DNA of 64,000 nucleotides from Macrostomum lignano. Its lineage: Eukaryota. Location of the stretch: contig NIVC01000059.1 of NCBI GenBank assembly GCA_002269645.1, positions 1,240,001-1,304,000 of the forward strand, written 5' to 3'. Within the stretch, counting starts at the first letter, position 1; every line of letters starts with the position of its first letter. Both the position numbers and the translations under genes were made by a program. The notes under the pieces were generated by a model. That model searched no databases, was not told the DNA's origin, and saw only the letters and a program-made list of their open reading frames with translations. Shown one piece after another: positions 16,691 to 54,092 of this stretch.

Positions 16691-17187
16691 TCTCGTTGAG
16701 TCATTTTCACTCACTCACCCACTCACTCACTCATTCACTCACTCACTCACACAATTACTCCATACATGAACCTTATCAACCATTCATTCAATAATACTGA
16801 AACAAGCATCAAAACATTGCTTAACGTCAGTTACGACTAGGGAAGGAATGGAAACAAAATCGTGTGTAGACAGACAGACCTTCTTAAGCATCTTAAAGCT
16901 TTGAGTAAAAATAACAGTTGATACAGATACACTATTGTCCAAGAGAAAAAATGATAATAATTTCCAAGAAATACCGCACGCCTTTTCTCTTGAACCTTGA
17001 AGCTTTTTAGTTAGAATCTAGGGTGTAATATTTAACAGAATGTTAAGCTATACGTTGCGGACGGCGGTCTGGGTGGAATAAATGTACGCATACTGTGCGC
17101 GCGTGCGTCTATTCATATGTACACTGTGCCGGAAAAGGGGTGGCAAGTGTCTGGGACCTGCCCGCCTGCCTGCCTGCCTCTGCCTAT

Positions 17188-17259
17188 CGTGGAATTTCCA
17201 AGAAATTCTTCTAAAAAGTCGACACCCAGCCAGATAGCACTTTGGAGAAGGCTTATAAA
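17188..17259 (+). promoter_or_regulatory. Putative Mx copy A promoter: kB-like GGAATTTCC overlapping GAS TTCCAAGAA, then TATAAA
   Basis: GGAATTTCC 17191-17199, TTCCAAGAA 17196-17204, TATAAA 17254-17259, ~110 bp before the ATG at 17370. A second TTCCAAGAA lies at ~16962-16970. Function is inferred from motifs only. Confidence 0.5.
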
Positions 17260-17369: not shown

Positions 17370-18518
17370 ATGAGCGAGGCTGATACGGCAAGGTAAGGTT
17401 AATTTAGGTTTTTTCTATTTATTTAACTTAACTAATCTACAACACACTTTATTTACGTCATACGTGTGCGACTGCCTGCATAAGATAGCATAGCAGCCAA
17501 GACTGCATAGCATATTCTATTTAATTTAAATATTGCATATTAAAAGTTTTAATTTGGAATTTAGGCCCCAATAATTCATCTTGAATAGTCCCAAATGATC
17601 CCAAATAGTCCCAGCTGATTCCAAATAGTCCCAGTTGATCCCAAATAGTTCCAGATGATCCCAAATAGTCCCAGTTGATCCCAAATAGTTTCAGATGATC
17701 CCAACAGTCCTAGCTAATTCCAAATATTCCCAGATGATCTCAAATAGTCCCAATATATCCCAAAATCACCCTAAATCCCAAACTAAACCCAAATCCTCCT
17801 ACATAGTCCCCAAAAATAAAACTCCAGAGCATTCTCCAATCTTCCTACCGCACTCGGAATCCCAGATCAACTTCAAAAATCCCAAGAAATCCCACCGAAC
17901 CCCCCCAACTCCCAGCCACATGAACGGCTCCGCCGTCGGTCCTGACGGTGACGGAGGCGACCAGCACGACGAGCTGCCGGCGCTGTCCTCGGCCTTCCGC
18001 CAGCGCATCCGGCCGGTGCTGAACCGTATCGACGAGCTGCGCTCCCACGGCCTGCAGAGCGACCTCAAGCTGCCCATGGTGGCGGTGGTGGGCGACCAGT
18101 CGGTGGGCAAGTCCTCGGTGCTGGAGGCCATCTCGGGCGTGGAATTTCCCCGCGGCACCGGCATGGTCACCCGCTGCGCCCTGCAGCTGTCCATGCAGTG
18201 GAACGCCGACCCTGAGGCGCCGTGGCACGGACGCATCAGCTACAAGGACGTCAACGGGCACAAGGTGGACAAGGAGCTCAACTCGCCTGGGGAAGTGGAC
18301 GGAGCCGTGAGGGAGGCCCAGCAGCGGATGACGCACGGAGACAATGAGATCTCGAGTGAGCAGATCGACCTGGCGATCAAGGGACCGGATGTTCCCGACC
18401 TGACCCTGATTGACCTGCCAGGCATCGCCAGGTGAGACGGACAGACAGACAGACACTAAGGCAGACAGACAGACACTAAGACAGACAGACAGACACTAAG
18501 ACAGACAGACAGACAGAA

Positions 18519-18603
<85 letters not shown>

Positions 18604-18622
18604 CTAAGGCAGACAGACACTA

Positions 18623-18667
<45 letters not shown>

Positions 18668-21600
18668 CTAAGACGGACAGACAGACGGACACTAAGACAG
18701 ACAGACACATTGGGCAAAAGAAACACGGGGACAAATCAGCACATATCATATCTCATATCAGATGAACGCAATGACCCCCGCACCCTCAGGTACTCTGCCA
18801 CAGGCGGTTCTGGCATCGCTCAGATCACCAAGTCGCTCATCGCCAAGTACGTCAGCCAGCCGCAGGTGCTCATCCTGGTGGTGGTGCCGTGCCACCAGGA
18901 CATCGAGACGGTCGAGGCGCTGTCACTGGCCAAGGAGGCCGACCCGCAGGGCGAGCGCACCATCGGGGTGCTCACGTGCCCGGACATGGTGAACAAGGGT
19001 GCGGAGCAGGAGACGCTGAAAATCGCCAACAACGAGAAGATCCCGCTGAAGAAGGGCTACGTGATGGTGAAGTGCCGCAGCCCCGAGGAGCTCAACAACG
19101 GCGTCACCCTGTCGGAGTCGGTGGCCAACGAGGCGGCCTTCTTCAAGACTCACCGGCACTTCAGCCTGCTGCCTGAGCAGTCCGTGGGCATTCGGACTCT
19201 GGCGGACAAGCTGACCGAGGAGCTGTTTGAGTCCGTGAAGAGGAACATCAGCACGCTGCAGAATGACATCCTGGTGAGGGAGTGAACAGGGATTCTTCAG
19301 AATTCTGGGTGTTCTGATCCCCAGGCTCTCGAGTGCTGAGGTCCTGATCCCCAGGCTCTCGAGTGCTGAGGTCCTGATCCCCAGACTCTCGTGTGCTGAG
19401 GTCCTGATCCCCAGACTTCTGTGTGCTGAGGTCCTGATCCCCAGACTCTCGTGTGCTGAGGTCCTGATCCCCAGACTCTCGTGTGCTGAGGTCCTGATCC
19501 CCAGACTTCTGTGTGCTGAGGTCCTGATCCCCAGACTCTCGTGTGCTGAGGTCCTGATCCCCAGGCTCTCGAGTGCTGAGGTCCTGATCCCCAGGCTCTC
19601 GTGTGCTGAGGTCCTGATCCCCAGACTCTCGTGTGCTGAGGTCCTGATCCCCAGGCTCTCGAGTGCTGAGGTCCTGATCCCCAGGCTCTCGAGTGCTGAG
19701 GTCCTGATCCCCAGGCTCTCGTGTGCTGAGGTCCTGATCCCCAGGCTCTCGAGTGCTGAGGTCCTGATCCCCAGGCTCTCGTGTGCTGAGGTCCTGATCC
19801 CCAGACTCTCGTGTGCTGAGGTCCTGATCCCCAGGCTCTCGAGTGCTGAGGTCCTGATCCCCAGACTCTCGTGTGCTGAGGTCCTGATCCCCAGACTCTC
19901 GTGTGCTGAGGTCCTGATCCCCAGACTCTCGTGTGCTGAGGTCCTGATCCCCAGACTTCTGTGTGCTGAGGTCCTGATCCCCAGACTTCTGTGTGCTGAG
20001 GTCCTGATCCCCAGGCTCTCGAGTGCTGAGGTCCTGATCCCCAGACTCTCGTGCGCTGAGCAGGGTTTCTGCTTACCTGGGTGTTGTAATCCCAGAGCCG
20101 TAAAGCCTAGGAAGTCCCCACGCCAGTGACTGTCAATTGTCTGTTCAGTGGTTCTCATATCAGTCCCGACACAGCTCACCTGCCCAGTCAAGCCGTCTCA
20201 TTCCCCAAAGCTCCACACGAGAGCCTCCCTGCCTGCCCCGCAGGAGATGCGCAAGAAGTTCCAGGAGGAGCTGCAGCGTCTCGGACAACCGGTCGCCGAG
20301 ACCAAAGACGAGAAACGGCGCTACCTGTTCGAGATGCTGAGCAACTTCAACAAAGACGTTGCCATAGCAACACAGGGCGAGATGAACGCCAGGTTTCACC
20401 TGTACGCCAAGTGCAGAAAGCACTGGACAGAGTTGGGGAAGCAGATTCATAGGGCTTGGCCAGGTAAGAAATTAGATGATAAACTGGGGCGTCTGGTTGG
20501 AGAAATAGAAAGGATGTTCATTATATTTTCAACACTGTTATATTCATGTGCTCAGGCTGGGTCACTCGCGGCCACATCTCGCACTATTGGCAGCCGCCCG
20601 AGCAGGTGACCCGACTAATAACAGACCTGCGAGGTCGCGAGCTCGCCTCCTACGATCACGTGTTCCCAATAATTGAACGAATCTACAAGGAGGAGTTTCT
20701 GAACAAACTGAAGCAGCCTGCGGAACAATTTTTGGAGCAGGTTGGATGATTTTGGTTTTATCGGGAAGCTGGGGGGTGGGGTGGCAGTCGTATGGGGTCG
20801 GCCGGTCCGTGAGAGTGGCGGGGAGGGTGGTAAGCGGTCCATGGGAATTAAGGGGCGTTGGTTTATGGGGTGCGGGTTAGCGGTCTATGTGCGAAAGTAT
20901 GGGGTTGGCGGGATTCTTTTGGCAATCGCAGCTCTATTAAAATGAAGTTTCCACAAAACCAAATCAATCAAGGTATCCGACGAGGTCACAGATGTGGTGC
21001 ACCTCATTGCCCAGAAGGTTTTTGGCGACTTCCAAGACATCTTCGAGGTGGTGACGGAGACCAGCAATGAGGAGATCGCCAAGGTGCTGGAGCTGGCCAG
21101 AGCGGATCTGAGCGGACGGCTGTTTCTTCAGGAGGCGCGAGTGTTCTCGCAGGACAGCCTGTTCCAGGAGCGCATTGCAAAGATTGAGGAGGATCTTTAC
21201 AAGAACAACAGCAACCAGCAGTGAGTGAAAATGATTACGTAACTGAAATTAGATGTAGAGATATTGATTAAGACAAGGCCTTGCAGCCCTAGAGAAATAC
21301 AGTTGCATGTACAAGAAGAGAGGGCAGATTGTCTGCAAATTAGCGATGACAAGACAGAAATTCAGAAGTGTGAGAGAGGGAGAGAGAGTTCTAGCCAGCT
21401 ATCAGCGCTGATGGTGGGGCAGAGGGACAGACTTCCAGCCAGCCAATCAGCGCTGATGGTAGGGCAGAGAGACAGACTTCCAGCCAGCCAATCAGCGCTG
21501 ATGGTGGGGCAGAGGGACAGACATCCAGCCAGCCAATCAGCGCTGATGGTGGGGCAGAGGGACAGACTTCCAGCCAGCCAATCAGCGCTGATGGTAGGGC

Positions 21601-22069
21601 AGAGGGACAGACTTCCAGCCAGCTAGTCAGCGCTGATGGTGGGGCAGAGGGACAGACTTCCAGCCAGCCAATCAGCGCTGATGATGGGGCAGAGGGACAG
21701 ACTGCCTGGCAGCCAATCAGCAACCGATCAGAAAATGCCAACCCAATCCCCGTCCGCAGGCCGCCCATCCCCGACAGCGCTGAGCGAATCCGCCGCGGTC
21801 TCGACGCCTACCTGCGGGTTGCCACTGAGCGACTGAGCGACACCATCCCGCAGTCCGTTCTCTACTTCATGTTCGACGTTGTTTCTAAGCAGCTCGGCAA
21901 CCGCGCCCTCGACCTGCTGTCCGAGTCCGAGTCTGCCGAGACGTTTCTGTCGCTGCTGCGTGAGCCGCGGCACAAAACTGCGAGAAGGAAACAGCTGAAG
22001 GAGATGCTGGAGCAGCTGCGGCTGGCGCAGCGGGACTTCAACAAGTTCCGGCTGGACGTGCAGGCTTGA
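17370..22069 (+). CDS. Mx: Mx-like dynamin-family large GTPase, copy A (short N-terminus), ~661 aa
   Basis: Exons 17370-17392, 17916-18431, 18790-19273, 20244-20463, 20556-20740, 20973-21220, 21760-22069 (1986 nt, phases consistent). G1 [20 protein letters not shown]2 [11 protein letters not shown]3 LIDLPG, G4 variant TCPD, middle-domain RGREL and a C-terminal GED. No PH domain or Drp1-type insert. AATAAA at ~22129. Confidence 0.9.
19311..20060. repeat. 30-bp VNTR in Mx copy A intron 3 (gtgtgctgaggtcctgatccccagactctc), ~25 units
   Basis: Tandem array; the inverted counterpart at ~28800-29426 is 4 units shorter. Confidence 0.95.
21400..21725. repeat. 45-bp CCAAT-containing tandem repeat in Mx copy A intron 6
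   Basis: Unit agccaatcagcgctgatggtggggcagagggacagacttccagcc, ~7 copies; related copies at ~26590-26700 and ~27370-27470. Confidence 0.9.
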
Positions 22070-23988: not shown

Positions 23989-26330
23989 ACCAACAATCAA
24001 TCCACAAACTAGCATCACCAATCAATCCACAAATTAGCATCACCAATCAATCCACAAACTAGCATCACCAACAATCAATCCACAAACTAGCATCACCAAC
24101 AATAAATCCACAAACTAGCATCACCAATCAATCCACAAGCATCACCAATCAATCCACAAGCTAGCATCACCAATCAATCCACAAACTAGCATCACCAATC
24201 AATCCACAAACTAGCATCACCAATCAATCCACAAACTAGCATCACCAACAATCAATCCACAAACTAGCATCACCAACAATCAATCCACAAACTAGCATCA
24301 CCAATCAATCCACAAACTAGCATCACCAACAATCAATCCACAAACTAGCATCACCAACAATCAATCCACAAACTAGCATCACCAACAATCAATCCACAAA
24401 CTAGCATCACCAACAATCAATCCACAAGCTCGCATCACCAACCAATCCACAAGCTAGCATCACCAACAATCAATCCACAAGCTCGCATCACCAATCAATC
24501 CACAAACTAGCATCACCAACAATCAATCCACAAACTAGCATCACCAATCAATCCACAAACTAGCATCACCAATCAATCCACAAACTAGCATCACCAACAA
24601 TCAATCCACAAACTAGCATCACCAACAATCAATCCACAAGCTCGCATCACCAACCAATCCACAAGCTAGCATCACCAACAATCAATCCACAAGCTCGCAT
24701 CACCAATCAATCCACAAACTAGCATCACCAACAATCAATCCACAAGCTCGCATCACCAACCAATCCACAAGCTAGCATCACCAACAATCAATCCACAAGC
24801 TCGCATCACCAATCAATCCACAAACTAGCATCACCAACAATCAATCCACAAGCTCGCATCACCAATCAATCCACAAACTAGCATCACCAACAATCAATCC
24901 ACAAGCTCGCATCACCAACCAATCCACAAGCTAGCATCACCAACAATCAATCCACAAGCTCGCATCACCAATCAATCCACAAACTAGCATCACCAACAAT
25001 CAATCCACAAACTAGCATCACCAACAACCAATCCACAAGCTAGCATCACCAACAATCAATCCACAAGCTCGCATCACCAACCAATCCACAAGCTAGCATC
25101 ACCAACAATCAATCCACAAGCTCGCATCACCAATCAATCCACAAACTAGCATCACCAACAATCAATCCACAAACTAGCATCACCAACAATCAATCCACAA
25201 ACTAGCATCACCAATCAATCCACAAACTAGCATCACCAACAATCAATCCACAAACTAGCATCACCAATCAATCCACAAACTAGCATCACCAACAATCAAT
25301 CCACAAACTAGCATCACCAATCAATCCACAAACTAGCATCACCAACAATCAATCCACAAACTAGCATCACCAACAATCAATCCACAAGCTCGCATCACCA
25401 ACCAATCCACAAGCTAGCATCACCAACAATCAATCCACAAACTAGCATCACCAACAATCAATCCTCAAACTAGCATCACCAACAATCAATCCACAAACTA
25501 GCATCACCAACAATCAATCCACAAGCTCGCATCACCAACCAATCCACAAGCTAGCATCACCAACAATCAATCCACAAGCTCGCATCACCAATCAATCCAC
25601 AAACTAGCATCACCAACAATCAATCCACAAGCTCGCATCACCAACCAATCCACAAGCTAGCATCACCAACAATCAATCCACAAGCTCGCATCACCAATCA
25701 ATCCACAAACTAGCATCACCAACAATCAATCCACAAGCTCGCATCACCAATCAATCCACAAACTAGCATCACCAACAATCAATCCACAAGCTCGCATCAC
25801 CAACCAATCCACAAGCTAGCATCACCAACAATCAATCCACAAGCTCGCATCACCAATCAATCCACAAACTAGCATCACCAACAATCAATCCACAAACTAG
25901 CATCACCAACAACCAATCCACAAGCTAGCATCACCAACAATCAATCCACAAGCTCGCATCACCAACCAATCCACAAGCTAGCATCACCAACAATCAATCC
26001 ACAAGCTCGCATCACCAATCAATCCACAAACTAGCATCACCAACAATCAATCCACAAACTAGCATCACCAACAATCAATCCACAAACTAGCATCACCAAT
26101 CAATCCACAAACTAGCATCACCAACAATCAATCCACAAACTAGCATCACCAATCAATCCACAAACTAGCATCACCAACAATCAATCCACAAACTAGCATC
26201 ACCAACAATCAATCCACAAGCTCGCATCACCAACCAATCCACAAGCTAGCATCACCAACAATCAATCCACAAACTAGCATCACCAATCAATCCACTAGCA
26301 TCACCAATCAATCCACAAGCATCGCCAATC
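23989..26330. repeat. Satellite, 25/28-bp unit (accaacaatcaatccacaaactagcatc), ~2.3 kb
   Basis: Strongly strand-biased CA-rich tandem array in the spacer between the Mx copies. Confidence 0.97.
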
Positions 26331-26799
26331 AACCTACAAGCCTCGCCCCACAGGTCACAGAATCCTTTATACTAAAATGGTTTGTTGGTAAAAAGTAGCG
26401 TTTTCGTGTCAGCTGTTCTCGTGTGTATTTATGCAGCAAAACTCGTACATAGAATTTTTAAGTAAATATTTGCATATTTGCAGTGCTTTTATCATATTTA
26501 ATAAAAGGTGCAACAAACTATTTTATTCATTTTATCGATATTTCTTACACTGGCCGTCGGAGGAGGACATTAGCAGAGGGAATAACACAGAGACACGCCA
26601 GCCAATCAGCGCTGATGATGGGGCAGAGAGACAGACGGCCAGCCAGCCAATCAGCGATAATGATGGGACAGAGAGACAGACGGCCAGCCAACCATAGTGC
26701 TTTTAAGTTCTGATACCATTAATCCATAAATTTTGAATTGAGGAAACACAAAACCGACAAAGAAAAATTAGTACGATTTTTGTAAATAAAAAGTAACTT

Positions 26800-29700
26800 T
26801 TACAGCCTGAACTTGTTGAAGTCCCGCTGCGCCAGCCGCAGCTGCTCCAGCATCTCCTTCAGCTGTTTCCTTCTCGCAGTTTTGTGCCGCGGCTCACGCA
26901 GCAGCGACAAAAACGTCTCGGCAGTCTCGGACTCGGACAGCAGGTCGAGGGCGCGGTTGCCGAGCTGCTTTGAAACAACGTCGAACATGAAGTAGAGAAC
27001 GGACTGCGGGATGGTGTCGCTCAGTCGCTCAGTGGCCACCTGCAGGTAGGCTTCGAGACCGCGGCGAATTCGCTCAGCGCTGTCGGGGACAGGTGGTCTG
27101 CGGGCGGGGATTGGGTCGGCATTTTCTGATTGGTTGCAAATTGGCTTTTATCGTCGGTCCCTCTTCCCCACCGCCAGCGCAGCCTCTCTCTCCCTCTCTC
27201 TTTTAACTTTCTGCATGTCTGTCGCGTGTTTGGCGCTGATTTGAAGGCACGGTTTTTTCTTCTCTTGCGTGTTCTCTTCTCGATGCTTTTCTCTGTCGGG
27301 ACTGGACTGCAATTTTCAGGCGGGCGATTGGGTCGGAATCTAATGATTGTTTGCTGATTGGCTCTGATCGTTTGTCCGGACTGTCGCTCTGCCCCACCAT
27401 CAGCACTGATTGGCTGCCAGGAAGTCTGTCCCTCTGCCCCACCGCCAGCGCTGATTGGCTGGCTGGAAGTCTCTCTCCCTCTCTCACTCTTCTGACTTTT
27501 TGTCTTGTTGTTATCGCTAATAAGCAGACAATCTGCCCTCTCTTCTCGTACATGTAAGTGTATTTCTCTAGGGCTCATGGCCTTGTCATAATTAATAACC
27601 CTACACCTAATTTCAGTTACGTAACCAGTTCCACTCACTGCTGGTTGCTGTTGTTCTTGTAAAGATCCTCCTCAATCTTTGCAATGCGCTCCTGGAACAG
27701 GCTGTCCTGTGAGAACACTCGCGCCTCCTGAAGAAACAGCCGTCCGCTCAGATCCGCTCTGGCCAGCTCCAGCACCTTGGCGATCTCCTCGTTGCTGGTC
27801 TCCGTCACCACCTCGAAGATGTCTTGGAAGTCGCCAAAAACCTTCTGGGCAATGAGGTGCACCACATCAGTGACCTCATCGGATACCTTGATTGATTTGG
27901 TTTTCATGGAAACTTCATTTTAATAAAGCTGCGATTGCCAAAAGGATGCCGCCAACCCCATACTTTCGCATATAGACCGCTAACCCGCACCCCATAAACC
28001 AACGCCCCTTAATTCCCGTGGACCACTTACCACCCTCCCCACCACTCTCACGGACCGGCCGACCCCATACGACTTCCACCCCACCCCCCAGCTTCCCGAT
28101 AAAACCAAAATCATCCAACCTGCTCCAAAAATTGTTCCGCAGGCTGCTTCAGTTTGTTCAGAAACTCCTCCTTGTAGATTCGTTCAATTATTGGGAACAC
28201 GTGATCGTAGGAGGCGAGCTCGCGACCTCGCAGGTCTGTTATTAGTCGGGTCACCTGCTCGGGCGGCTGCCAATAGTGCGAGATGTGGCCGCGAGTGACC
28301 CAGCCTGAGCACATGAATATAACAGTGTTGAAAATATAATGAACATCCTTTCTATTTCTCCAACCAGACGCCCCAGTTTATCATCTAATTTCTTACCTGG
28401 CCAAGCCCTATGAATCTGCTTCCCCAACTCTGTCCAGTGCTTTCTGCACTTGGCGTACAGGTGAAACCTGGCGTTCATCTCGCCCTGTGTTGCTATGGCA
28501 ACGTCTTTGTTGAAGTTGCTCAGCATCTCGAACAGGTAGCGCCGTTTCTCGTCTTTGGTCTCGGCGACCGGTTGTCCGAGACGCTGCAGCTCCTCCTGGA
28601 ACTTCTTGCGCATCTCCTGCGGGGCAGGCAGGGAGGCTCTCGTGTGGAGCTTTGGGGAATGAGACGGCTTGACTGGGCAGGTGAGCTGTGTCGGGACTGA
28701 TATGAGAACCACTGAACAGACAATTGACAGTCACTGGCGTGGGGACTTCCTAGGCTTTACGGCTCTGGGATTACAACACCCAGGTAAGCAGAAACCCTGC
28801 TCAGCGCACGAGAGTCTGGGGATCAGGGCCTCAGCACACGAGAGTCTGGGGATCAGGACCTCAGCACACAGAAGTCTGGGGATCAGGCCCTCAGCACACA
28901 GAAGTCTGGGGATCAGGACCTCAGCACTCGAGAGCCTGGGGATCAGGACCTCAGCACACGAGAGTCTGGGGATCAGGCCCTCAGCACACAGAAGTCTGGG
29001 GATCAGGACCTCAGCACACAGAAGTCTGGGGATCAGGACCTCAGCACACAGAAGTCTGGGGATCAGGACCTCAGCACACGAGAGCCTGGGGATCAGGACC
29101 TCAGCACACGAGAGTCTGGGGATCAGGACCTCAGCACACGAGAGTCTGGGGATCAGGACCTCAGCACACAGAAGTCTGGGGATCAGGACCTCAGCACACG
29201 AGAGTCTGGGGATCAGGACCTCAGCACACGAGAGTCTGGGGATCAGGACCTCAGCACACGAGAGCCTGGGGATCAGGACCTCAGCACTCGAGAGCCTGGG
29301 GATCAGGACCTCAGCACACAGAAGTCTGGGGATCAGGACCTCAGCACTCGAGAGCCTGGGGATCAGGACCTCAGCACACGAGAGTCTGGGGATCAGGACC
29401 TCAGCACTCGAGAGCCTGGGGATCAGAACACCCAGAATTCTGAAGAATCCCTGTTCACTCCCTCACCAGGATGTCATTCTGCAGCGTGCTGATGTTCCTC
29501 TTCACGGACTCAAACAGCTCCTCGGTCAGCTTGTCCGCCAGAGTCCGAATGCCCACGGACTGCTCAGGCAGCAGGCTGAAGTGCCGGTGAGTCTTGAAGA
29601 AGGCCGCCTCGTTGGCCACCGACTCCGACAGGGTGACGCCGTTGTTGAGCTCCTCGGGGCTGCGGCACTTCACCATCACGTAGCCCTTCTTCAGCGGGAT

Positions 29701-30053
29701 CTTCTCGTTGTTGGCGATTTTCAGCGTCTCCTGCTCCGCACCCTTGTTCACCATGTCCGGGCACGTGAGCACCCCGATGGTGCGCTCGCCCTGCGGGTCG
29801 GCCTCCTTGGCCAGTGACAGCGCCTCGACCGTCTCGATGTCCTGGTGGCACGGCACCACCACCAGGATGAGCACCTGCGGCTGGCTGACGTACTTGGCGA
29901 TGAGCGACTTGGTGATCTGAGCGATGCCAGAACCGCCTGTGGCAGAGTACCTGAGGGTGCGGGGGTCATTGCGTTCATCTGATATGAGATATGATATGTG
30001 CTGATTTGTCCCCGTGTTTCTTTTGCCCAATGTGTCTGTCTGTCTTAGTGTCC

Positions 30054-30117
<64 letters not shown>

Positions 30118-31348
30118 TTCTGTCTGTCTGTCTGTCTTAGTGTCTGTCTGTCTGTCTTAGTGTCTGTCTGTCTGCCTTAGTGTCTGTCTGTCTGTCCGTC
30201 TCACCTGGCGATGCCTGGCAGGTCAATCAGGGTCAGGTCGGGCACATCCGGTCCTTTGATCGCCAGGTCGATCTGCTCACTCGAGATCTCATTGTCTCCG
30301 TGCGTCATCCGCTGCTGGGCCTCCCTCACGGCTCCGTCCACTTCCCCAGGCGAGTTGAGCTCCTTGTCCACCTTGTGCCCGTTGACGTCCTTGTAGCTGA
30401 TGCGTCCGTGCCACGGCGCCTCAGGGTCGGCGTTCCACTGCATGGACAGCTGCAGGGCGCAGCGGGTGACCATGCCGGTGCCGCGGGGAAATTCCACGCC
30501 CGAGATGGCCTCCAGCACCGAGGACTTGCCCACTGACTGGTCGCCCACCACCGCCACCATGGGCAGCTTGAGGTCGCTCTGCAGGCCGTGGGAGCGCAGC
30601 TCGTCGATACGGTTCAGCACCGGCCGGATGCGCTGGCGGAAGGCCGAGGACAGCGCTGGCAGCTCGTCGTGCTGGTCGCCTTCATCACCGTCAGGACCGA
30701 CGGCGGAGCCGTTCATGTGGCTGGGAGTTGGGGGGGTTCGGTGGGATTTCTTGGGATTTTTGAAGTTGATCTGGGATTCCGAGTGCGGTAGGAAGATTGG
30801 AGAATGCTCTGGAGTTTTATTTTTGGGGACTATGTAGGAGGATTTGGGTTTAGTTTGGGATTTAGGGTGATTTTGGGATATATTGGGACTATTTGAGATC
30901 ATCTGGGAATATTTGGAATTAGCTAGGACTGTTGGGATCATCTGAAACTATTTGGGATCAGCTGGGACTATTTGCGATCAGCTGGGACTATTTGGAATTA
31001 GCTAGGACTGTTGGGATCAGCTGGGACTTATCTGGGATCAGTTGGGACCATTTGGGATCAGCTGGGACTATTCGGGATAAGCTGGCTCACGAGTCTTGCA
31101 GCTCCTGGACACCCGACGGCGACGGCATCTGGATGTTGAGCTGCTCCTGAAGTGCCTCCTGAACATCAGGCTGTGCACCGCCGCTCGGACTGAGTAGTTC
31201 GCTGGGCGGTCTCGATTTCTTCTTTCGCTGGCGTCTGATAAAGCAAGTGCAGTGCAATTTTACAATAAATGACTGTGCAATACCCCACAAGTCTGAGTCC
31301 CAATGTAAGATCATGTTAATGCAATTACCTTGAAGTTTCCAGACTCAT
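26800..31348 (-). CDS. Mx: Mx-like dynamin-family large GTPase, copy B (extended basic N-terminus), ~704 aa
   Basis: Exons (minus) 31348-31329, 31234-31091, 30720-30205, 29950-29467, 28616-28397, 28304-28120, 27886-27639, 27097-26800 (2115 nt, phases consistent). The five internal shared exons are the same length as in copy A. N-terminus MSLETSRRQRKKKSRPPSELL...; C-terminus ends FNKFRL*. Confidence 0.88.
28800..29426. repeat. 30-bp VNTR in the matching intron of Mx copy B, ~21 units
   Basis: Reverse complement of the 19311-20060 array. Confidence 0.95.
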
Positions 31349-31452
31349 ATTGCACAGTAATATTATATCTTACTGTTATAATCCTACTGATATTCTAATA
31401 ATAACTTTAGCAGATTTTTTACAACTTTGCCGATTTACTATGCCCCGAAGAC

Positions 31453-31508
31453 TTTTATAGTAGGCCAATGGGAGGGGGCTCCGCAATTTCCAAGAAATTC
31501 CACGTCAG
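31453..31508 (-). promoter_or_regulatory. Putative Mx copy B promoter: TGACGTG / kB-like / GAS element, CCAAT and TATAAAA
   Basis: Minus strand reads gctgacgtggaatttcttggaaattg (GAS at 31488-31496), then a CCAAT (plus strand, ~31465) and TATAAAA (31453-31459), ~105 bp before the ATG at 31348. Function is inferred. Confidence 0.5.
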
Positions 31509-32149
31509 CAGGGGATCAGTTGAAATGTATAGAGGCTGAGAGCAACTGTTCTTGAAAACAACGTACTTTTAATATAGTCAGTGTACAACTGAATCCTGCA
31601 TGTACAGAGGCTGAAACTGTCACAGCTTCTCCACGATAAGCAATTGAATTTAAACTGGACAAAATAAATTATTAGCTTATTCTCTGTCTGAATGTAAAGT
31701 CTCAAATTTGTAGCTCAATCAGACTGGAGACAGTAAGCATGTGAAGTTTGTCTGTTTTTTTTGGTTTTGGGCTGTCCACTCACTCATTTCCCCAGAAGGA
31801 TGCATAGGTCTCAGTGTACATGGCAACGTACAGTTTTTTGGAGCAACTTACCTTCATCTACGGCCTTTTCTGCATTGCCCCAGTGCGATGTACGCGCTAC
31901 GGGTAGCTAAGGACAGTTAACCGGACAGTGCATACAGATAATTGATGTCTCAAGGACCGCAGTAGTATAACAGGACGTAAAACTCAAAGATATTGTATTG
32001 TTTTTCGACGTCAATTTCCTGGGAAAAATGGACTGCAAAACAAGGAAAATATTTAAATTAATATTTAAAAAATAAACTTTTCACTACATAGCTCTATAAA
32101 ATAAAACAGCAACAACAAAATACTTTGTCAGTCAAGCAAGTCTTTAGAG

Positions 32150-34430
32150 GCAAAGACAATATTTGTCACAGGGTGCGGTTCAGGGCCTGGGTGCAAGCGA
32201 ACGTAGGCTGCACCGCCGGCAGTGATCGGGGCGCCGGCGTCAGCCAGCAGGCAGTCGACGAAACGCCGAGTGCACGCCTGTCCTCGCCAGTAGGGCGCCT
32301 GCAGCGTCAGCAGCGGCCACCAGCTGCGGGCAGTACGACTCCTCTAGCTGGAGACGTCGACGGCGCAACGTCAGCGGCGGCTCGAGCGAATCCGACAGCG
32401 TCCAGCAACAGACTGTGCAGCAGCACGGTCTCGATCACCGCCTGGAACAACGCCGCCCTCTGGCGGTCGGGCGGGGCCTCGGACTGCAGGACAGCCCATA
32501 GCTCACAGAACGGAAGGCAGCCCAGGCAAGTCCGCGGCGGCGTCGCAGATCCTCGCAAACGTCAGGCACCAGACCGCCGAGGTAGATGAACTACTGACAG
32601 CACGGAAGCTTCGTCACCTGTTCATCAGCGCCTCGGCAGAAAATTGCAGCCTCGATGTCGTCCGGCACGCAGAGCACGACGGTCTTCTGCGTGCTGACCA
32701 CCAGGCCGACACTCGCCGCAACGCTCACCAGCAGGTCCAGTTGTCGCTGGCCGCCGTTGACGGTCGAGGACAGCAGAGCGAGATCGTCGGCGTAGCCAAG
32801 CACGCTGAGCCGCCTCTCCGGTTGGCGTCGACCCACGCGTCGCTGCAGCAGGAAGCCGTTATCGTTAGAAGGGAGAGCAGTCCGCAGCACCCAGTCAAGC
32901 ACCAGGACGAACAGGAACGGCGCAAGCGTATCTCATTGAAGCAGCCTAAGAGGATGTCTTCAAGAAATCCGACAGGCCGTCCGGTGTTAGCACAGCATGT
33001 GCAATGATAGAGCGCCATGACGGCGGAAATCAGCTCCTCTGGCACGTTGTACGCACGAAGCACCATTGGGAGCACGGCCATCGCAACCAAGTCGAAAGCC
33101 TTCCTGAAGTCAATAAAGAGAGCAATCAGGTTCGACTGGCGGGCCCGGAGTCCCCAGGGCGAGCATCACAACGTCGGCTGTGCTGACTGGGGCTACATTA
33201 AAACTCTCCTCTGCCGACAACGGCGTCTCCGGCGGCAGCTTTAGATCGTTTGGCAGCAGGAGCGACGAAGAACTCGGGCAGCTCATTTCTGCGCTCATCC
33301 GGAGTGTCGCCAGCCAAGTTGAGTGGGATGCGCCGCTTCCGCCCCGTCAGGCGTTGATGGCGAAGCAGGCCACACGCCCTTTGGCGTCGGGTCCAGCGGC
33401 GGTGGGGGCTTGGATGGCGCCGTCAACAGCGGCTTGTTGCCGCTGCAGGTAGACAGCCGCCTGCTGAGACGGAGCCTCTTCAGCTCTGCCTTCGCTTGCC
33501 AAATCGCAGGGTCATCCAGCCAGACCGGCTGCCTATGTTGGGCCGGTTGCATCAGCGGGACTGCTTGCTCCGACGCGGCTGTAACCGCGGCACTTACCTG
33601 CGTGTACTCGGCGCGCCCGCACCTGTCACCAAGCGTGCTGAAGAAGGCGCTAGCGAAATAGCGATGCGCTAGGGTGTCCCTGAGCGCATGGTAGTAGCAC
33701 CGCGGTGGCCGCTTCGGCGGACGGTAAAGGAGATCACGCAGGTCGCAGACGAGGACCGCAGAGCCAGCGGCGTGATTGTGCGGAAGTTGACGGCGTGGTG
33801 GCGCTCACGAAGACGCACAAGCACGTGGTCGAGCTGTGCAGCCTGCCTCCGCGTCGCATTCCTCCGCCTCCGCTTGCAGCCCACGAAGGTCGCGAGCCTG
33901 CCGGGTGGCTTGCGAAAGCGGGTGTTGGCTGAAACCATGTCCTGCCTCTCCAGGAAGTCCTCCAGCGCTTCAGTCATGCCGTTCTCTCGCGGCGTTACAA
34001 ACAGCGACCGCTGGGACCTACGCAAAACCTTATTCAGGTCTCCGAGGTCGACCACTGTGTCACGCCGCGCCGTCTCCTCCACCTGGGCCGAGAGCTGCAT
34101 ACTCGAAGAAGTTTTGAGCCTCGTCAGGTCGGGTGGCAGGAGGCGCGTATGCGCAGAACAGGCGAGCGTTCAGGCCGCAAAGCCTGACGTCGACCCGAAG
34201 CAGCCGGTCAGACAAAGAGACGCAGCGACAGCTCTGCTGCAGCCTCGGTCCGATCAGCGCTCCAACTCCTCCATGGCCTCGCTGGTCCGCCGACGTGTAC
34301 CAGAGGGTCCAACCGGCGCCCGGGGTCCTCACAATGAATTCCCGGGTCGGTCCTGATGGACACTTGTTGCAGCGAGATGACATCGCATCTGAGGTCAAGC
34401 GTTGGCTGCGCCAGCAGCCGTCTCAGCCAG
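32150..34430 (-). mobile_element. Degenerate non-LTR retrotransposon (APE endonuclease plus reverse transcriptase, RTE-like)
   Basis: APE motifs GVGALI..RLL..CAYAP (34060-34398) and GDLN, NTRFRK, QLDHVL (33669-34100); RT motif LGYADDLALL (32591-32902); C-terminal LFQAVIETVLL (32307-32558). Broken by frameshifts and deletions. Clade assignment is tentative. Confidence 0.9.
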
Positions 34431-35150
34431 GCAGCCTTGAAATATAAAATACAACAGTCTAGCGTGCTTTGCATGCTAAATTAAAAGAATGGGGTAATCT
34501 TCACTGCCCCAGATCAAATCCTATTGTTGATTTTGTGGGGAAAGATTTTTTTCCTCTCTCCACAGTGTACTCATATTTTCCAAGAAATTGGACCCCCGAA
34601 AAATTACATGATCTTTGAGTTTTTACGAGCTTATGCGAAAAATCCGATATTCTGGTAAAAATTTTTAATATCTTGACTTGATTCTTGTTTGAGAAGGTGC
34701 GCAAAAACTTCGCCCGTTTTCCCCCCCTTCACCGGCCGTCTGATTTTTGGCAGCTTTTTAGTAAAATTGACGCTCAAATGACATTTGTCGCGTTTTAATA
34801 CTACTGCTGAGTACTGCAGCAGACATTTTTTGCCACGATAGTTTGGGATGCCTAAAATTGGAATTCTCCTTTGACAATTTCAATATAGAGCGGGCCGTTC
34901 TCTACGCAGTATAACAAATAATCGATTTAGCATATATAGTTGTAGAATCTCTGGTGTGTCTGTCCATGCAGTAAGATTTTATTAGACTATATGAAATCTG
35001 CCGAAGCAAACGCGTCGTTCCATGAATAATCTCAACACAGTACTCGCTCCAGCTGTGTGGTCTGTGGCTGCTGGCTGCCACTGCACACTAATTAAATAAC
35101 AAAATAAGATGTTGAATCCACGGCTACAAAAGCAGATTCTCTAATGAGAT

Positions 35151-46339: not shown

Positions 46340-46910
46340 GTTTCTTAGAAATTTTTACACGGGTTTTTACCTTTGAGCCTCTTTATAAAACCGTGTCTGT
46401 TTCTTAGAAACAACCTTGGAAACTAACATGAAAATATCCGACGTTTCGTGGAAACTATCGTGGAGGTTGTTTCTTAGAAAATTTGAACCAGGTTTTATAA
46501 ACCCTGTAAACTATATCAACATTTCTTGGAAACTAAATCGACATTTCTTAGAAACAATATCAATATTTCTTGGAATCCATATTAACATTTCTTAGAAACC
46601 ATATCGACATTTCTTAGAAACTATATCAACATTTCTTAGAAACCATATCGATATTTCTTAGAAACTATATTAACATTTCTTAGAAACTATATTTACATTT
46701 ATGAGAAAATACATAAAAGTTTCTTAGAAAGCAACATCGATGTATCTTAGAAAGAATATGAACGCATCATGCAAACAACATTGTTTCCTAGAAACATGTT
46801 AAAGTTTCATAGAAATTACTTTCGAATTTCTTAGAAACAAAACTCATGTTTTAAAAACAATTTATTATTATCTTAGAATCGATACCGGTGTTTCTAAGAA
46901 ACGTCTTATC
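46340..46910. repeat. Degenerate ~22-bp array built on the quasi-palindrome TTTCTTAGAAA
   Basis: More than 15 copies of tttc-NNN-gaaa at ~22-bp spacing, just downstream of the MAP4K stop. Confidence 0.8.
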
Positions 46911-47016: not shown

Positions 47017-50000
47017 CTAAGCCACAGGGTCGGCTCTGGCGTGGCCGCAGCCAACAATCAGCAGCAGGTCACAGCTGGCCATCGGGTCGTGCACCGGCCG
47101 ACGCTCCAGCACCGGGTTGGGCCCGGCAACGCCGACAAATCGATAAACGTGATCGGGGTCATCAAAACTGTGCAACAGATCCGTATCATTGTTCGCAGTC
47201 TTAGTTAGCTCCGAGTCGAAGCAGCGAGCTTGAAAACCGTGCTTATAAAAGCAGACAACGGCTCGATCTTCTAACGATAGTGCATTCTCGATTGTGAAGC
47301 TGAGAGAGACGGCGCCGCCTAGGGAGCGACCATTCGCCGGGTGGAACAGTCGCGCCTGGTTGCTATGGCAAACCAGCACGCTGGACAGGTCCAGCTGGGA
47401 AACGCAGGTGGTTTCAACCTGTGCGGAGTTGATTTAAGATTCTTAAGATAAGTTGAGCAACCCATTAGATACCTGCCTGATACCCATTAGATACATGCCT
47501 GATACCCATTAGATACCTGCCTGATACACATTAGATACCTGCCTGATACCCATTAGATACCTGCCTGATACCCATTAGATACCTGCCTGATACCCATTAG
47601 ATACCTGCCTGATAGCCATTAGATACCTGCCTGATACCCATTAGATACCTGCCTGATACCCATTAGATACCTGTTTGAGATACCCAGTAGATACCTGTCT
47701 GAGATACCTAGTAGATACCTGTCTGAGATACCTAGTAGATACCTGTCTGAGATACCTAGCAGATACCTGTCTGAGATACCTAGTAGATACCTGTCTGAGA
47801 TACCTAGTAGATACTTGTCTGAGATACCCATTAGATACCTGTCTAACATACACATAAGACAGCTGTCCGAGATACCCATCAAACACTGTGATACCCATTA
47901 AGTACTCTGTTACTGAGATTACTGTTAAACAACCTAAGATGCCATTAGAATTTAGACACCTGTCTAAGATACCTAATAAAAACAAGTCCAAGATTCCTTT
48001 TAGAATATATTTACCTGACATACCCATTAGTTACCTAGATCTGCAATACCCCATTAGTTCCCCAGATTTGAAATACCCTATTAGTTACCTAGATCTGCAA
48101 TACCAAATTAGTTACCTAGATCTGCAATACCCCATTAGTTCCCCAGATTTGAAATACCCTATTAGTTACCTAGATCTGCAATACCCCATTAGTTACCTAG
48201 ATCTGAAAATACCCGAATCAGAAACCCAGTGAAAGCTACTCAAACAATGATTACCTCCTCATCCAAGCCGGCTGGGTCAGCGGGCCACAGCTCAACCAGT
48301 CCATCCAGCCGATTCAAGTCCAGCAATCGAAACCGAACGCAGGCCTCGTTGCGGCCCTGCAGCACACCGACGCACACGAACGGCAGTTTATAGCCGCTGC
48401 GAACAAATAATTCGAATGTCAGCAGAGGCTGAGGCAGATCCGGGCATTGCAGACACTTGTACTCTAGGAAATTTCGCCGCCCATTGTCCCATTGTAGTAG
48501 GAGAACTGAGTCTGGCATTGCGCAGGCCAGCCACCGTTCGGCTGTCTCCGGGTGCTTCCTGGCCGAGACTCGCATGCAGCCTTTGGTGCGGGGAATCTTT
48601 GCGGACGGCGGGTTGTTGGCTAGGCGCATGGCAACCCGGCCTTTCAGCTGAGGAGTTGAGGATTGGGAATTGCTTTTGTTTGAGTCTGATTATATTGAGA
48701 CTCAGGGTGGTCACTCAGAGAATCAGGGTGGTCACTCAGAGACTCAGGCTGGTCACTCAAGAGACTCAGGGTGGTCACTCAAGAGACTCAGGGTGGTCAC
48801 TCAGAGACTCAGGGTGGTCACTCAGAGACTCAGGGTGGTCACTCAAGAGACTCAGGGTGGTCACTCAGAGACTCAGGGTTGTCACTAAAGAGACTCAGGG
48901 TGGTCACTCAAGAGACTCAGGCTGGTCACTCAAGAGACTCAGGGTTGTCACTAAAGAGACTCAGGGTGGTCACTCAAGAGACTCAGGGTTGTCACTAAAG
49001 AGACTCAGGCTGGTCACTAAAGAGACTCAGGGTTGTCACTAAAGAGACTCAGGCTGGTCACTAAAGAGACTCAGGGTGGTCACTCAAGAGACTCAGGGTG
49101 GTCACTCAAGATACTCAGGCTGGTCACTAAAGAGACTCAGGGTGGTCACTCAGAGACTCAGGGTTGTCACTAAAGAGACTCAGGCTGGTCACTCAGAGAC
49201 TCAGGGTGGTCACTCAAGAGACTCAGGGTGGTCACTCAAGAGACTCAGGGTGGTCACTCAAGAGACTCAGGGTGGTCACTCAAGAGACTCAGGGTGGTCA
49301 CTCAAGAAACTCAGAATGGTCACTCAGAGACTCAGGGTGGTCACTAAAGAGACTCAGGGTGGTCACTCAAGAGACTCAGGCTGGTCACTCAAGAGACTCA
49401 GGGTGGTCACTCAAGAGACTCAGGGTGGTCACTCAAGAGACTCAGGGTGGTCACTAAAGAGACTCAGCCAATAGCTAGCCTTACATTGCAGTAAAGTAGA
49501 AACTTTTTATAGGAATAAAAATAGTTTTAAAAATATAAATAAAATCAATCCGAAAATAGATATTTACTGTGCTAATAGCATAGAATATCATACATTAGAT
49601 AACTCACATCCGTCTAACTCTGAACGGTAAAAAATTCAGTGAAGGCTTAAAAATTCAAATTTTTTTGTTTTCGGAGGTACCTAGAGAAGCAAGAGAGAGA
49701 GAGGGGGGGGAGAGATATGGTATGTTGGGAAAACTCATAAACAGCAAAGCATTCAGCGCCAATTCTTGGTCAAAGCTAATATTCGTTTAACATAAAATTC
49801 TCCATATGGAAAGAATTACAGACTGTTATAATCGTAGTGGTTTCTCTGGAGTTTCTGTTAGTGACCCATGAGCCTCTGAGTGACTCACTGAGCCTATGAG
49901 TGACTCACTGAGCCTCTTAGTGACTCACTGAGCCTCTGGGTGACTCACTGAGCCTCTTAGTGACCCATGAGCCTCTGAGTGACTCACTGAGCCTATGAGT

Positions 50001-53953: not shown

Positions 53954-54046
<93 letters not shown>

Positions 54047-54047
54047 G

Positions 54048-54092
<45 letters not shown>

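What the first reader, a model, noticed from the sequence alone, without database searches (positions are those of the whole stretch)
31091..31348. Copy B-specific N-terminal exon with an NLS-like basic cluster: convergent MxB-type architecture
A 20-nt start exon (MSLETS) and a symmetric phase-2, 144-nt exon add RRQRKKKSRPPSELLSPSGGAQPDVQEALQEQLNIQMPSPSGVQELQDS ahead of the shared GTPase exon. Copy A has only MSEADTAS there. RRQRKKKSR fits a classical monopartite importin-alpha NLS and is followed by SP sites that could be phosphorylated. Human MxB differs from MxA by an N-terminal extension that directs it to nuclear pores and contains a triple-arginine capsid-binding motif. This looks like an independent invention of the same cytoplasmic versus nuclear or pore division of labour (inference).
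Basis: partly seen in the sequence, partly recalled or inferred. Interest (0 to 1): 0.8.

Follow-up and report, generated by a model that had tools for sequence, protein, structure and literature searches.

The report
Extra basic N-terminal exon, Mx copy
One of two almost identical, back-to-back copies of an invertebrate Mx-type antiviral GTPase gene has an extra small exon that would add a strongly basic, nuclear-import-like tag to the protein's start, but neither the splicing nor the function has been shown.

Summary
On the minus strand, an ATG at 31348 opens a 20-nt coding exon. A 94-nt GT-AG intron follows, then a 144-nt exon (31234-31091) and a 370-nt GT-AG intron ending at the GTPase exon (30720). 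The full model is an intact 704-aa Mx-like protein. Copy A (plus strand, 17370-22069, 661 aa) joins MSEADTA directly to the same exon.

The two proteins differ at 5 shared residues, the N-terminus and a 4-aa tail. The central exons and short introns are identical and divergence rises towards both ends, which points to gene conversion. The extra exon lies just outside the homologous tract.

Exon 2 looks coding. Its GC is 0.60 against 0.37 for intron 1, and codon usage gives z=3.4, the best of six frames. Copy A's intron offers no competing in-phase cassette.

No transcript evidence exists, and skipping exon 2 also keeps the frame. The peptide has no homologue anywhere searched. The closest relative's mRNA has the short, copy-A-like start.

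RRQRKKKSR meets simple NLS rules and sits in a disorder-type segment, so an MxB-like division of labour is reasonable but untested. Polybasic N-termini also occur in another invertebrate Mx (abalone). Interest is moderate.

The parts
31485..31500 (.). Palindromic AATTTC-YWRG-GAAAT element (TTCnnnGAA, GAS-like) in the promoter of copy B
   Evidence: Exact 14-16 nt match to the element 47 nt upstream of copy A's TATA box (17193-17207). Only 0.3 matches are expected in the window.
31452..31459 (-). TATAAAAG box of copy B
   Evidence: Read directly. It lies 111 nt upstream of the ATG, against 116 nt in copy A. The 31348 ATG is the first ATG downstream of it.
31329..31348 (-). Coding part of exon 1 of copy B: ATG + 17 nt (MSLETS, plus 2 nt of the next codon), donor AAG|GTAATT
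   Evidence: Same layout as copy A exon 1 (ATGAGC..CAAG|GTAAGG, 17370-17392). A at -3 of the ATG.
31235..31328 (-). Intron 1 of copy B (94 nt, GT-AG, GC 0.37)
   Evidence: Its length matches the confirmed 92-nt intron 5 of the same gene.
31091..31234 (-). Copy-B-specific exon 2 (144 nt, symmetric phase 2), encoding (R)RQRKKKSRPPSELLSPSGGAQPDVQEALQEQLNIQMPSPSGVQELQD(S)
   Evidence: GC 0.60. GC at codon positions 1/2/3 is 0.72/0.43/0.67, against 0.63/0.36/0.82 for the rest of the CDS. Codon z=3.4. Best acceptor and donor among the alternatives.
31210..31234 (-). Codons of the polybasic cluster R7-R15 (RRQRKKKSR). The first R is made by the exon 1/exon 2 junction
30721..31090 (-). Intron 2 of copy B (370 nt). 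The 20-nt minisatellite at 30884-31085 starts 5 nt after the exon 2 donor, and homology with copy A begins here
30205..30720 (-). Exon 3 of copy B (first shared exon: end of the disordered N-terminus, BSE helix, P-loop GDQSVGKS), with in-frame Met57 at 30716-30714
26800..29950 (-). Exons 4-8 of copy B: 29950-29467, 28616-28397, 28304-28120, 27886-27639, 27097-26800 (stop included)
   Evidence: Junctions chosen by spliced alignment to P0001. All are GT-AG.
17370..22069 (+). Copy A: exons 17370-17392, 17916-18431, 18790-19273, 20244-20463, 20556-20740, 20973-21220, 21760-22069 (661 aa). No equivalent of exon 2

Best explanation
The window carries two tail-to-tail (inverted) paralogues of an Mx-like dynamin GTPase from an invertebrate animal. 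The closest named relatives are Macrostomum lignano (flatworm) Mx proteins.

The gene bodies are kept nearly identical by gene conversion. The 5' ends lie outside the converted tract and have diverged.

Copy B has gained, or alone retained, a 144-nt symmetric coding exon between the conserved short first exon (MS...) and the first shared exon. When included, it lengthens the disordered N-terminus from 34 to 77 residues. It places a polybasic head (RRQRKKKSR, net +6 in the first 16 residues) on an acidic, S/P/Q-rich linker in front of an otherwise copy-A-like protein.

The most likely consequence (inferred) is a change in where the protein goes or what it binds. The leading option is importin-alpha-type nuclear import or nuclear-envelope association, which would split tasks with the short, presumably cytoplasmic copy A.

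Shown: gene structures, phases, paralogue identity, coding-like composition and motif rules. Inferred: that the exon is spliced in, that translation starts at 31348, and any localisation or antiviral role.
For: Gene family:
- Pfam finds Dynamin_N, Dynamin_M and GED with no PH or PRD domain.
- The protein aligns end to end with human MxB and MxA structures at E=1e-103, against 1e-48 for dynamin.
- All top database hits are Mx.

Exon reality:
- Canonical GT-AG sites resemble the gene's other introns.
- GC jumps from 0.37 to 0.60 exactly at the acceptor.
- Codon-position GC pattern and codon z=3.4 are best in the predicted frame.
- No rival cassette exists in B, and none at all in A's intron.

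Start codon:
- In both copies the ATG is the first one after a TATA box 111-116 nt upstream. Both begin ATGAG and both exons end CAAG|GTAA.
- Promoter-to-exon-1 alignment gives z=3.0, with a shared rare palindrome.

Paralogue relationship:
- There are 5 amino-acid differences. Exons 4-6 and introns 3 and 5 show no mismatches over their aligned bases. Intron 4 is 96.5% identical.
- Divergence is higher at both ends: 6 differences in exon 3, 14 in the last exon, and 78% identity in intron 7.
- Homology ends in the minisatellite next to the exon 2 donor.

Motif:
- pat4 and K-K-x-R rules are met in B only.
- Such clusters are rare, about 1e-4 of windows.
- Residues 1-77 fall on the disordered side of the charge-hydropathy boundary.

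Precedent:
- The first 25 residues of MxB act as an NLS and set its specificity (PMC8173038).
- Mx paralogues undergo gene conversion that spares the specificity regions (PMC4687636).
Against: - No RNA evidence for either junction. The species is absent from every protein or transcript collection searched (best hit 69% identity).
- The codon signal of exon 2 (z=3.4) is weaker than that of the conserved exons (mean 6.1, minimum 2.7).
- The exon peptide has no homologue in 1.84 billion representatives.
- The closest relative's mRNA has a copy-A-like start.
- Skipping the exon keeps the frame, so inclusion is not required.
- The cluster does not match the stricter Kosugi class 1/2 consensus (checked by eye, no tool).
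- No NLS predictor could be run, and polybasic stretches have many other roles.
- In human MxB, a plain SV40-type NLS could not replace the natural N-terminus for envelope targeting (PMC8173038). An NLS-like string alone therefore does not make an MxB.
Confidence: 0.4

Rival explanations
1. Exon 2 is skipped in most or all transcripts, being either an alternative cassette or an open intronic block. Copy B then mainly makes a short, copy-A-like protein (MSLETSSHMNGS...). The pair differs chiefly in promoter and regulation, not in protein targeting.
For: - The exon is symmetric, so the 31329/30720 junction is in frame.
- Copy A and the relative's mRNA (P0001, L001/L002) use the short architecture.
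- The exon has no homologue and a weaker codon signal than the other exons.
- The promoters differ in sequence apart from one motif.
Against: - The acceptor has the best pyrimidine tract and the donor the best consensus match in the interval.
- There is a sharp exon-like GC step.
- The codon pattern is significant and frame-specific.
- A 608-nt intron holding a 144-nt GC-rich open block in exactly the required phase would be a coincidence. Copy A's intron offers no such block.
Confidence: 0.25
2. The exon is real, but the polybasic head is not an import signal. It binds acidic membrane lipids, nucleic acid or RNPs, or a viral target directly, or it acts as a nucleolar signal.
For: - There are 7 basic residues in 9, followed by an acidic disordered linker.
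- Established knowledge: dynamin-family proteins bind membranes, and human MxA uses a lysine stretch in loop L4 for lipid binding.
- The basic motif of MxB is needed for capsid binding rather than import as such (titles cited in PMC8173038, refs B10 and B33).
- An abalone Mx also starts with a polybasic cluster, MGGNKKKNR.
Against: Nothing in the sequence separates these roles from an NLS. RKKK and KKSR fit the classical monopartite pattern.
Confidence: 0.2
3. Exons 1 and 2 are 5'UTR and translation starts at Met57 (30716-30714) in the shared exon. Both copies then make the same protein body.
For: - An in-frame ATG sits 4 nt into exon 3 in both copies.
- In the relative's mRNA an upstream in-frame AUG (MSRRRQ...) precedes the called start. 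That 53-codon stretch has non-coding composition (GC3 0.54 against 0.89, z=1.0). Open upstream frames therefore do occur in the leaders of these genes.
Against: - Under scanning, the first AUG is used. It has A at -3 in both copies, and no other ATG lies between the TATA box and it.
- Both first exons keep the phase needed to read into exon 3 despite different lengths (20 and 23 nt).
- The ATGAG start is shared with the relative's called start codon.
Confidence: 0.1
4. The inverted duplicate is an assembly artefact, for example two haplotypes or a collapsed or expanded repeat. 'Copy A' and 'copy B' would then be alleles or a chimera.
For: - The long central tract is 100% identical, introns included.
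- The locus is full of minisatellites, and a 2.3-kb satellite separates the arms.
Against: - The two 5' ends are completely different sequences, each with its own TATA box, first exon and flanks.
- The 3' ends have diverged (78% identity in intron 7, different stop positions).
- The divergence gradient is what gene conversion between real inverted paralogues produces, and this is documented for Mx genes (PMC4687636).
Confidence: 0.05

Closest known systems
Human MX2/MxB (78-kDa isoform) versus MX1/MxA
   Same: - A paralogue pair of Mx GTPases in which one member has a longer disordered N-terminus carrying a basic cluster within the first ~15-25 residues.
- Here the N-terminal region before the first BSE helix is 77 aa in B and 34 aa in A.
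- An internal in-frame Met could give a short isoform lacking the signal.
- Gene conversion homogenises the BSE and GTPase parts while the specificity-determining ends stay different (PMC4687636).
   Different: - There is no sequence homology between the extensions.
- The motif is RKKK-type rather than RRR11-13.
- The extension comes from one discrete symmetric exon in a pair that is otherwise about 99% identical. MxA and MxB are much more diverged than that (general knowledge, not measured here).
- The host is an invertebrate without a known interferon system.
- Localisation and antiviral activity are unknown.
- A simple classical NLS could not substitute for the MxB N-terminus in envelope targeting (PMC8173038).
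Rodent Mx1 (nuclear) / Mx2 (cytoplasmic) pair
   Same: Recently homogenised Mx paralogues that divide labour by compartment through a short basic signal (PMC4687636).
   Different: The mouse Mx1 signal is C-terminal (general knowledge). Here the C-termini differ only by 4 residues, with no basic motif.
Invertebrate Mx proteins (Macrostomum lignano with at least 6 copies, Branchiostoma, Saccoglossus, Haliotis, Owenia)
   Same: - Same family and domain architecture (PMC11789081).
- Lineage-specific duplication.
- Haliotis rufescens Mx1-like also begins with a polybasic cluster, MGGNKKKNR.
   Different: - The M. lignano paralogues retrieved have short, non-basic N-termini.
- The paper on invertebrate Mx does not use the term 'N-terminal' at all (0 occurrences).

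Membership tests
Mx subfamily of dynamin-like large GTPases | Dynamin-type G domain with G1 P-loop (GDQSxGKS), G3 (DLPG) and G4 (T-K-x-D) | tested here: met
   Pfam Dynamin_N E=3e-38. GDQSVGKS and DLPG are invariant in alignment A1. G4 reads TCPD rather than TKPD. The same change occurs in P0001 and in M. lignano Mx, so it is a clade trait and not a lesion.
Mx subfamily of dynamin-like large GTPases | Middle domain plus GED forming the stalk and BSE, with no PH domain and no proline-rich domain | tested here: met
   Dynamin_M E=7e-41 and GED E=1.5e-14, with no other domain above its cut-off. Residues 77-702 align with full-length MxA and MxB chains.
Mx subfamily of dynamin-like large GTPases | Closer to Mx than to dynamin, Drp1 or OPA1 | tested here: met
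   MxB/MxA E=1e-103 against dynamin 1e-48, Drp1 1e-41 and OPA1 1e-21. The top 120 database hits are Mx. No phylogenetic tree was built.
Mx subfamily of dynamin-like large GTPases | Induced by infection or interferon-type signalling, with antiviral activity | not testable with these tools
   Only a hint: both promoters carry a rare TTCnnnGAA palindrome.
MxB-type paralogue (N-terminal nuclear-envelope targeting and capsid-binding domain) | N-terminal extension, absent from the sister paralogue, carrying a basic cluster | tested here: met
   In the gene model, B has 43 extra residues with RRQRKKKSR and A has none. This depends on exon 2 being spliced in, which was not shown.
MxB-type paralogue (N-terminal nuclear-envelope targeting and capsid-binding domain) | Homology to the vertebrate MxB N-terminal domain, or orthology to MX2 | tested here: not met
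   The exon peptide has no hit at E<=1e-3 in 1.84 billion proteins. The A/B split is a local, recent event.
MxB-type paralogue (N-terminal nuclear-envelope targeting and capsid-binding domain) | Triple-arginine motif (RRR11-13) needed for capsid binding | tested here: not met
   The sequence is RRQRKKK, with no three consecutive arginines.
MxB-type paralogue (N-terminal nuclear-envelope targeting and capsid-binding domain) | Localisation at nuclear pores or envelope that depends on the N-terminus | not testable with these tools
   Needs cell biology.
Classical monopartite importin-alpha NLS | K-K/R-x-K/R core in an accessible, disordered region | tested here: met
   KKSR at 12-15 and pat4 RKKK at 10-13. 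Residues 1-77 have mean hydropathy 0.373, below the 0.441 boundary. These pattern rules have low specificity, and no trained predictor was available.

The most novel reading that the evidence does not exclude
An invertebrate with no known interferon system has independently arrived at the MxA/MxB solution. Two Mx genes share one body, kept the same by gene conversion, and a single young orphan exon acts as a plug-in targeting module. That module sends one copy to the nucleus or nuclear pores, possibly switchable by exon skipping or by initiation at Met57. This would be a very clean natural experiment in how antiviral GTPases gain a new compartment through one exon.
Probability: 0.15. Interest if true: 0.7.

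Novelty: new variant of a known kind. Interest (0 to 1): 0.35.

Why it matters
Mx proteins are now known to predate interferon and to be duplicated in several invertebrates, with six or more copies in a flatworm (PMC11789081). What their paralogues do differently is unknown.

In this pair the two proteins are identical except for five residues, a 4-aa tail and one extra N-terminal exon. Any difference in localisation or antiviral range could therefore be assigned to that exon. In that sense it is easier to interpret than the much more diverged MxA/MxB pair.

If confirmed, the pair would show that a short basic N-terminal module is a repeatable way to diversify Mx function. It would also show that gene conversion can coexist with functional divergence at the gene ends.

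If the exon is not used, the locus is an ordinary recent Mx duplication.

Tried and rejected
1. Homologues of the exon 2 peptide: an exhaustive HMMER search of 1.84 billion representatives gave 0 hits. Caveat: gene callers may truncate N-termini, and representatives at 50% identity can hide isoforms.

2. Transcript evidence. The species is not in the protein or contig collections (best hit 69%), so exact look-ups were pointless. The only related transcripts (L001/L002) have a copy-A-like start. Their upstream in-frame AUG (MSRRRQ...) at first looked like a conserved basic extension. I rejected it as support because it has non-coding composition (GC3 0.54 against 0.89, z=1.0) and no similarity to the window.

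3. Origin of exon 2. Local alignments to the adjacent 20-nt minisatellite, to copy A's intron on both strands and to itself were no better than shuffles. There is no other copy in the window.

4. Organism identification from the neighbouring MAP4K kinase. Identity was 55-60% to insects, fish and flukes alike, which is uninformative.

5. Rfam scan of the window found nothing.

Disorder was judged from composition only.

7. The bacterial promoter and terminator scan does not apply to this eukaryotic locus.

Full report
**What is at the coordinates**

Read on the minus strand, the sequence runs as follows.
- A TATAAAAG box lies at 31459-31452.
- The first ATG downstream of it is at 31348.
- The coding exon ATGAGTCTGGAAACTTCAAG ends at 31329 and is followed by GTAATT.
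- A 94-nt AT-rich intron ends in cttgctttatcag.
- A 144-nt block (31234-31091) is followed by GTGAGC.
- A 370-nt intron ends at the acceptor ctcccag|C at 30720.

The junctions give [64 protein letters not shown]...

**Gene models**

Spliced alignment to the closest database protein (P0001, 69% identity) fixed the remaining junctions. All are GT-AG.
- Copy B has 8 coding exons between 31348 and 26800 and encodes an uninterrupted 704-aa protein.
- Copy A lies on the plus strand with 7 coding exons between 17370 and 22069, and encodes 661 aa. Its 23-nt first exon (MSEADTA) is spliced straight to the shared exon at 17916.
- The genes are tail to tail. Their stop codons are 4.7 kb apart, and a 28/53-nt satellite fills most of the spacer.

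**Family**

- The protein has Dynamin_N, Dynamin_M and GED domains and nothing else above threshold.
- It aligns over residues 77-702 with full-length human MxB and MxA structures at E about 1e-103, against 1e-48 for dynamin.
- All 120 listed hits are Mx proteins. The best named ones are Macrostomum lignano (52-58%), then amphioxus (about 49%).
- Mx genes in invertebrates, including at least six in M. lignano, are already described (PMC11789081).
- The species itself is not represented in the collections. A neighbouring MAP4K gene gave no taxonomic resolution. I can only say it is an invertebrate animal, probably a flatworm.

**Relationship of the two copies**

- The arms A 17584-22054 and B 31052-26803 are 92-98% identical.
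- Identity is not uniform. Exons 4-6 and introns 3 and 5 have no mismatches over their aligned bases. Intron 3 differs only in length (358 against 254 nt).
- Exon 3 has 6 differences, exon 7 has 4, the last exon has 14, and intron 7 is only 78% identical.
- At the protein level there are 5 substitutions plus a DVQA tail on A.
- A core that is identical through its introns, with divergence rising towards both edges, is what gene conversion between older paralogues produces. This is well documented for mammalian Mx genes, including tracts that run into introns (PMC4687636).
- Homology stops in a 20-nt minisatellite that begins 5 nt after the exon 2 donor. Exon 2 therefore lies immediately outside the homogenised tract.
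- Further upstream the two copies share only a common layout. A rare palindrome AATTTC-YWRG-GAAAT comes first (0.3 expected in the window), and a TATA box lies 26-47 nt downstream of it. The first ATG lies 111-116 nt further on, opening an exon that begins ATGAG and ends CAAG|GTAA.
- A global alignment of this region scores z=3.0 against shuffles. I read this as weak evidence that the two promoters and first exons are anciently homologous.
- On that reading exon 1 of B is a genuine first coding exon.

**Is exon 2 an exon?**

For:
- Its GC content (0.60) matches the other exons (0.55-0.66) and drops to 0.37 in intron 1 exactly at the predicted acceptor.
- In the predicted frame, GC at codon positions 1/2/3 is 0.72/0.43/0.67. 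This follows the 0.63/0.36/0.82 pattern of the known CDS.
- Codon likelihood is the best of the six frames and 3.4 SD above composition-matched shuffles. All antisense frames carry stops.
- Of all AG...GT blocks of 30 nt or more that are open, a multiple of three and in phase between exon 1 and exon 3, all 44 are nested in this segment. The 31234 acceptor and 31091 donor have the best signals. Copy A's 523-nt intron yields none.
- The purine-rich GAAAGAAGAAA just inside the acceptor resembles a splicing enhancer. This rests on general knowledge and was not tested.

Against:
- Conserved exons score higher on the same test (mean z 6.1, minimum 2.7, and they were scored with a table trained on themselves).
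- No homologue of the peptide exists in 1.84 billion representative proteins.
- The origin of the sequence is untraceable.
- Because the exon is symmetric, skipping it gives an in-frame MSLETSSHMNGS... protein that mirrors copy A.
- I put the probability that the exon is included in at least a substantial share of transcripts at about 0.7.

**The related species**

P0001 comes from two transcript contigs (L001 and L002, Logan assemblies of SRR30276804 and SRR30276812).
- Its called start, ATGAGC (MSSMKTSNG...), matches the ATGAG starts of both window copies and leads directly into the conserved region. The relative therefore shows the short architecture.
- The frame stays open to the 5' end of both contigs. 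The first AUG of the mRNA lies 53 codons upstream, in frame, and reads MSRRRQSH....
- This looked like a conserved basic extension, but the stretch has GC3 of 0.54 against 0.89 for the CDS and a codon z of 1.0. A second frame is open too, and it has no similarity to the window.
- I therefore treat it as a leader sequence and not as support. It does show that in-frame upstream AUGs occur in these genes.

**The motif**

- RRQRKKKSR occupies residues 7-15. Its first arginine is created by the exon 1/exon 2 junction.
- It satisfies the PSORT pat4 rule (RKKK) and the K-K/R-x-K/R core (KKSR). Copy A and the retrieved flatworm paralogues have nothing comparable at their N-termini.
- Windows this basic make up about 1e-4 of all stop-free windows in the six-frame translation of the window.
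- The first 16 residues carry a net charge of +6 and the next 61 carry -12. The 77-residue N-terminus is 68% disorder-promoting residues and lies on the disordered side of the charge-hydropathy boundary. The cluster would therefore be exposed.
- Two SP dipeptides (S22, S45) and a basophilic site (KKKS14) are present. Their phosphorylation is conjecture.
- The pattern rules have low specificity, and no trained predictor could be run.

**Comparison with MxB**

- The first 25 residues of human MxB act as an NLS and determine antiviral specificity. Deleting them makes the protein diffusely cytoplasmic (PMC8173038).
- RRR11-13 is required for anti-lentiviral activity (PMC4687636, citing Goujon 2015).
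- The window pair resembles this in outline: a long basic N-terminus against a short one, a possible short isoform from an internal Met, and a homogenised BSE/GTPase core.
- It fails the membership tests that could be run. There is no homology, no RRR, and no orthology.
- In MxB, an SV40-type NLS did not restore envelope targeting (PMC8173038). An NLS-like string is therefore not sufficient for MxB-like behaviour.
- An abalone Mx also begins with a polybasic cluster, MGGNKKKNR, so basic N-termini recur among invertebrate Mx proteins.

**Verdict**

The structural interpretation, a copy-B-specific coding exon that adds a polybasic head, is the best reading but lacks RNA support. The functional interpretation, an MxB-like split between nucleus or pore and cytoplasm, is a reasonable and testable hypothesis resting only on analogy. 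It is a new variant within a known theme (Mx paralogues that diversify at their ends while gene conversion keeps the core uniform) and is of moderate interest.

Noticed in passing
window 17584-22054 (+) and 31052-26803 (-): The inverted Mx duplicates show a gene-conversion-like gradient. The central exons and short introns are 100% identical. Divergence rises to 78% identity in intron 7 and to complete dissimilarity upstream of the 20-nt minisatellite.
   Followed up: yes
window 16959-16972, 17193-17207, 31485-31500; also 34575-34589 and 46340-46838: The palindrome AATTTC-YWRG-GAAAT (a TTCnnnGAA, STAT/GAS-like core) sits upstream of the TATA box in both Mx promoters. One-mismatch copies occur near 34575, and there is a cluster of six at 46340-46838. 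In all, 15 matches are found against 0.3 expected. This is a possible shared regulatory element.
   Followed up: partly
window 29793-29782 (-) / 18947-18958 (+), residues 289-292 of copy B: The G4 nucleotide-specificity motif reads TCPD instead of TKPD in both window copies, in P0001 and in three M. lignano Mx proteins. All 17 other Mx sequences aligned have TKPD or TRPD. This looks like a clade-specific loss of the G4 lysine.
   Followed up: partly
L001 nt 90-248; L002 nt 100-258: The related species' Mx transcripts have their first AUG 53 codons upstream of, and in frame with, the called start. It would read MSRRRQSHQQ..., but the stretch has non-coding codon composition. The two contigs also differ at the 5' end, and L002 appears to retain an intron acceptor.
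   Followed up: yes
P0047 (Haliotis rufescens Mx1-like), residues 1-10: An abalone Mx begins MGGNKKKNRY. This is another invertebrate Mx with a polybasic N-terminal cluster.
   Followed up: no
window 32131-34422 (-): Reverse-transcriptase-like ORFs of a non-LTR retrotransposon lie about 0.8 kb upstream of copy B's first exon. The frame is broken across several ORFs.
   Followed up: no
window 47020-61648 (-): A MAP4K-type gene (STE20-like kinase domain exons plus citron-homology exons) is 55-60% identical to homologues from insects, fish and flukes alike.
   Followed up: partly
window 23989-26341; 19314-20060 / 28800-29426; 18435-18707 / 30033-30201: A 2.3-kb 28/53-nt satellite lies between the two 3' ends. 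Intronic 30-nt and 4-nt arrays differ in copy number between the two copies (24.9 against 20.9 units, and 68 against 42 units).
   Followed up: partly
window 11273-11848 (+): An ORF fragment carries a WW-domain-like sequence (WRESKTADGRIYYWNTKTR...), probably an exon of another gene. Long (CTGT)n-type arrays lie nearby.
   Followed up: no
window 22055-22069 (+) versus 26800-26802 (-): Copy A ends ...FRLDVQA* and copy B ends ...FRL*. The relative ends ...FRLDIG, so B appears to have gained an earlier stop.
   Followed up: partly
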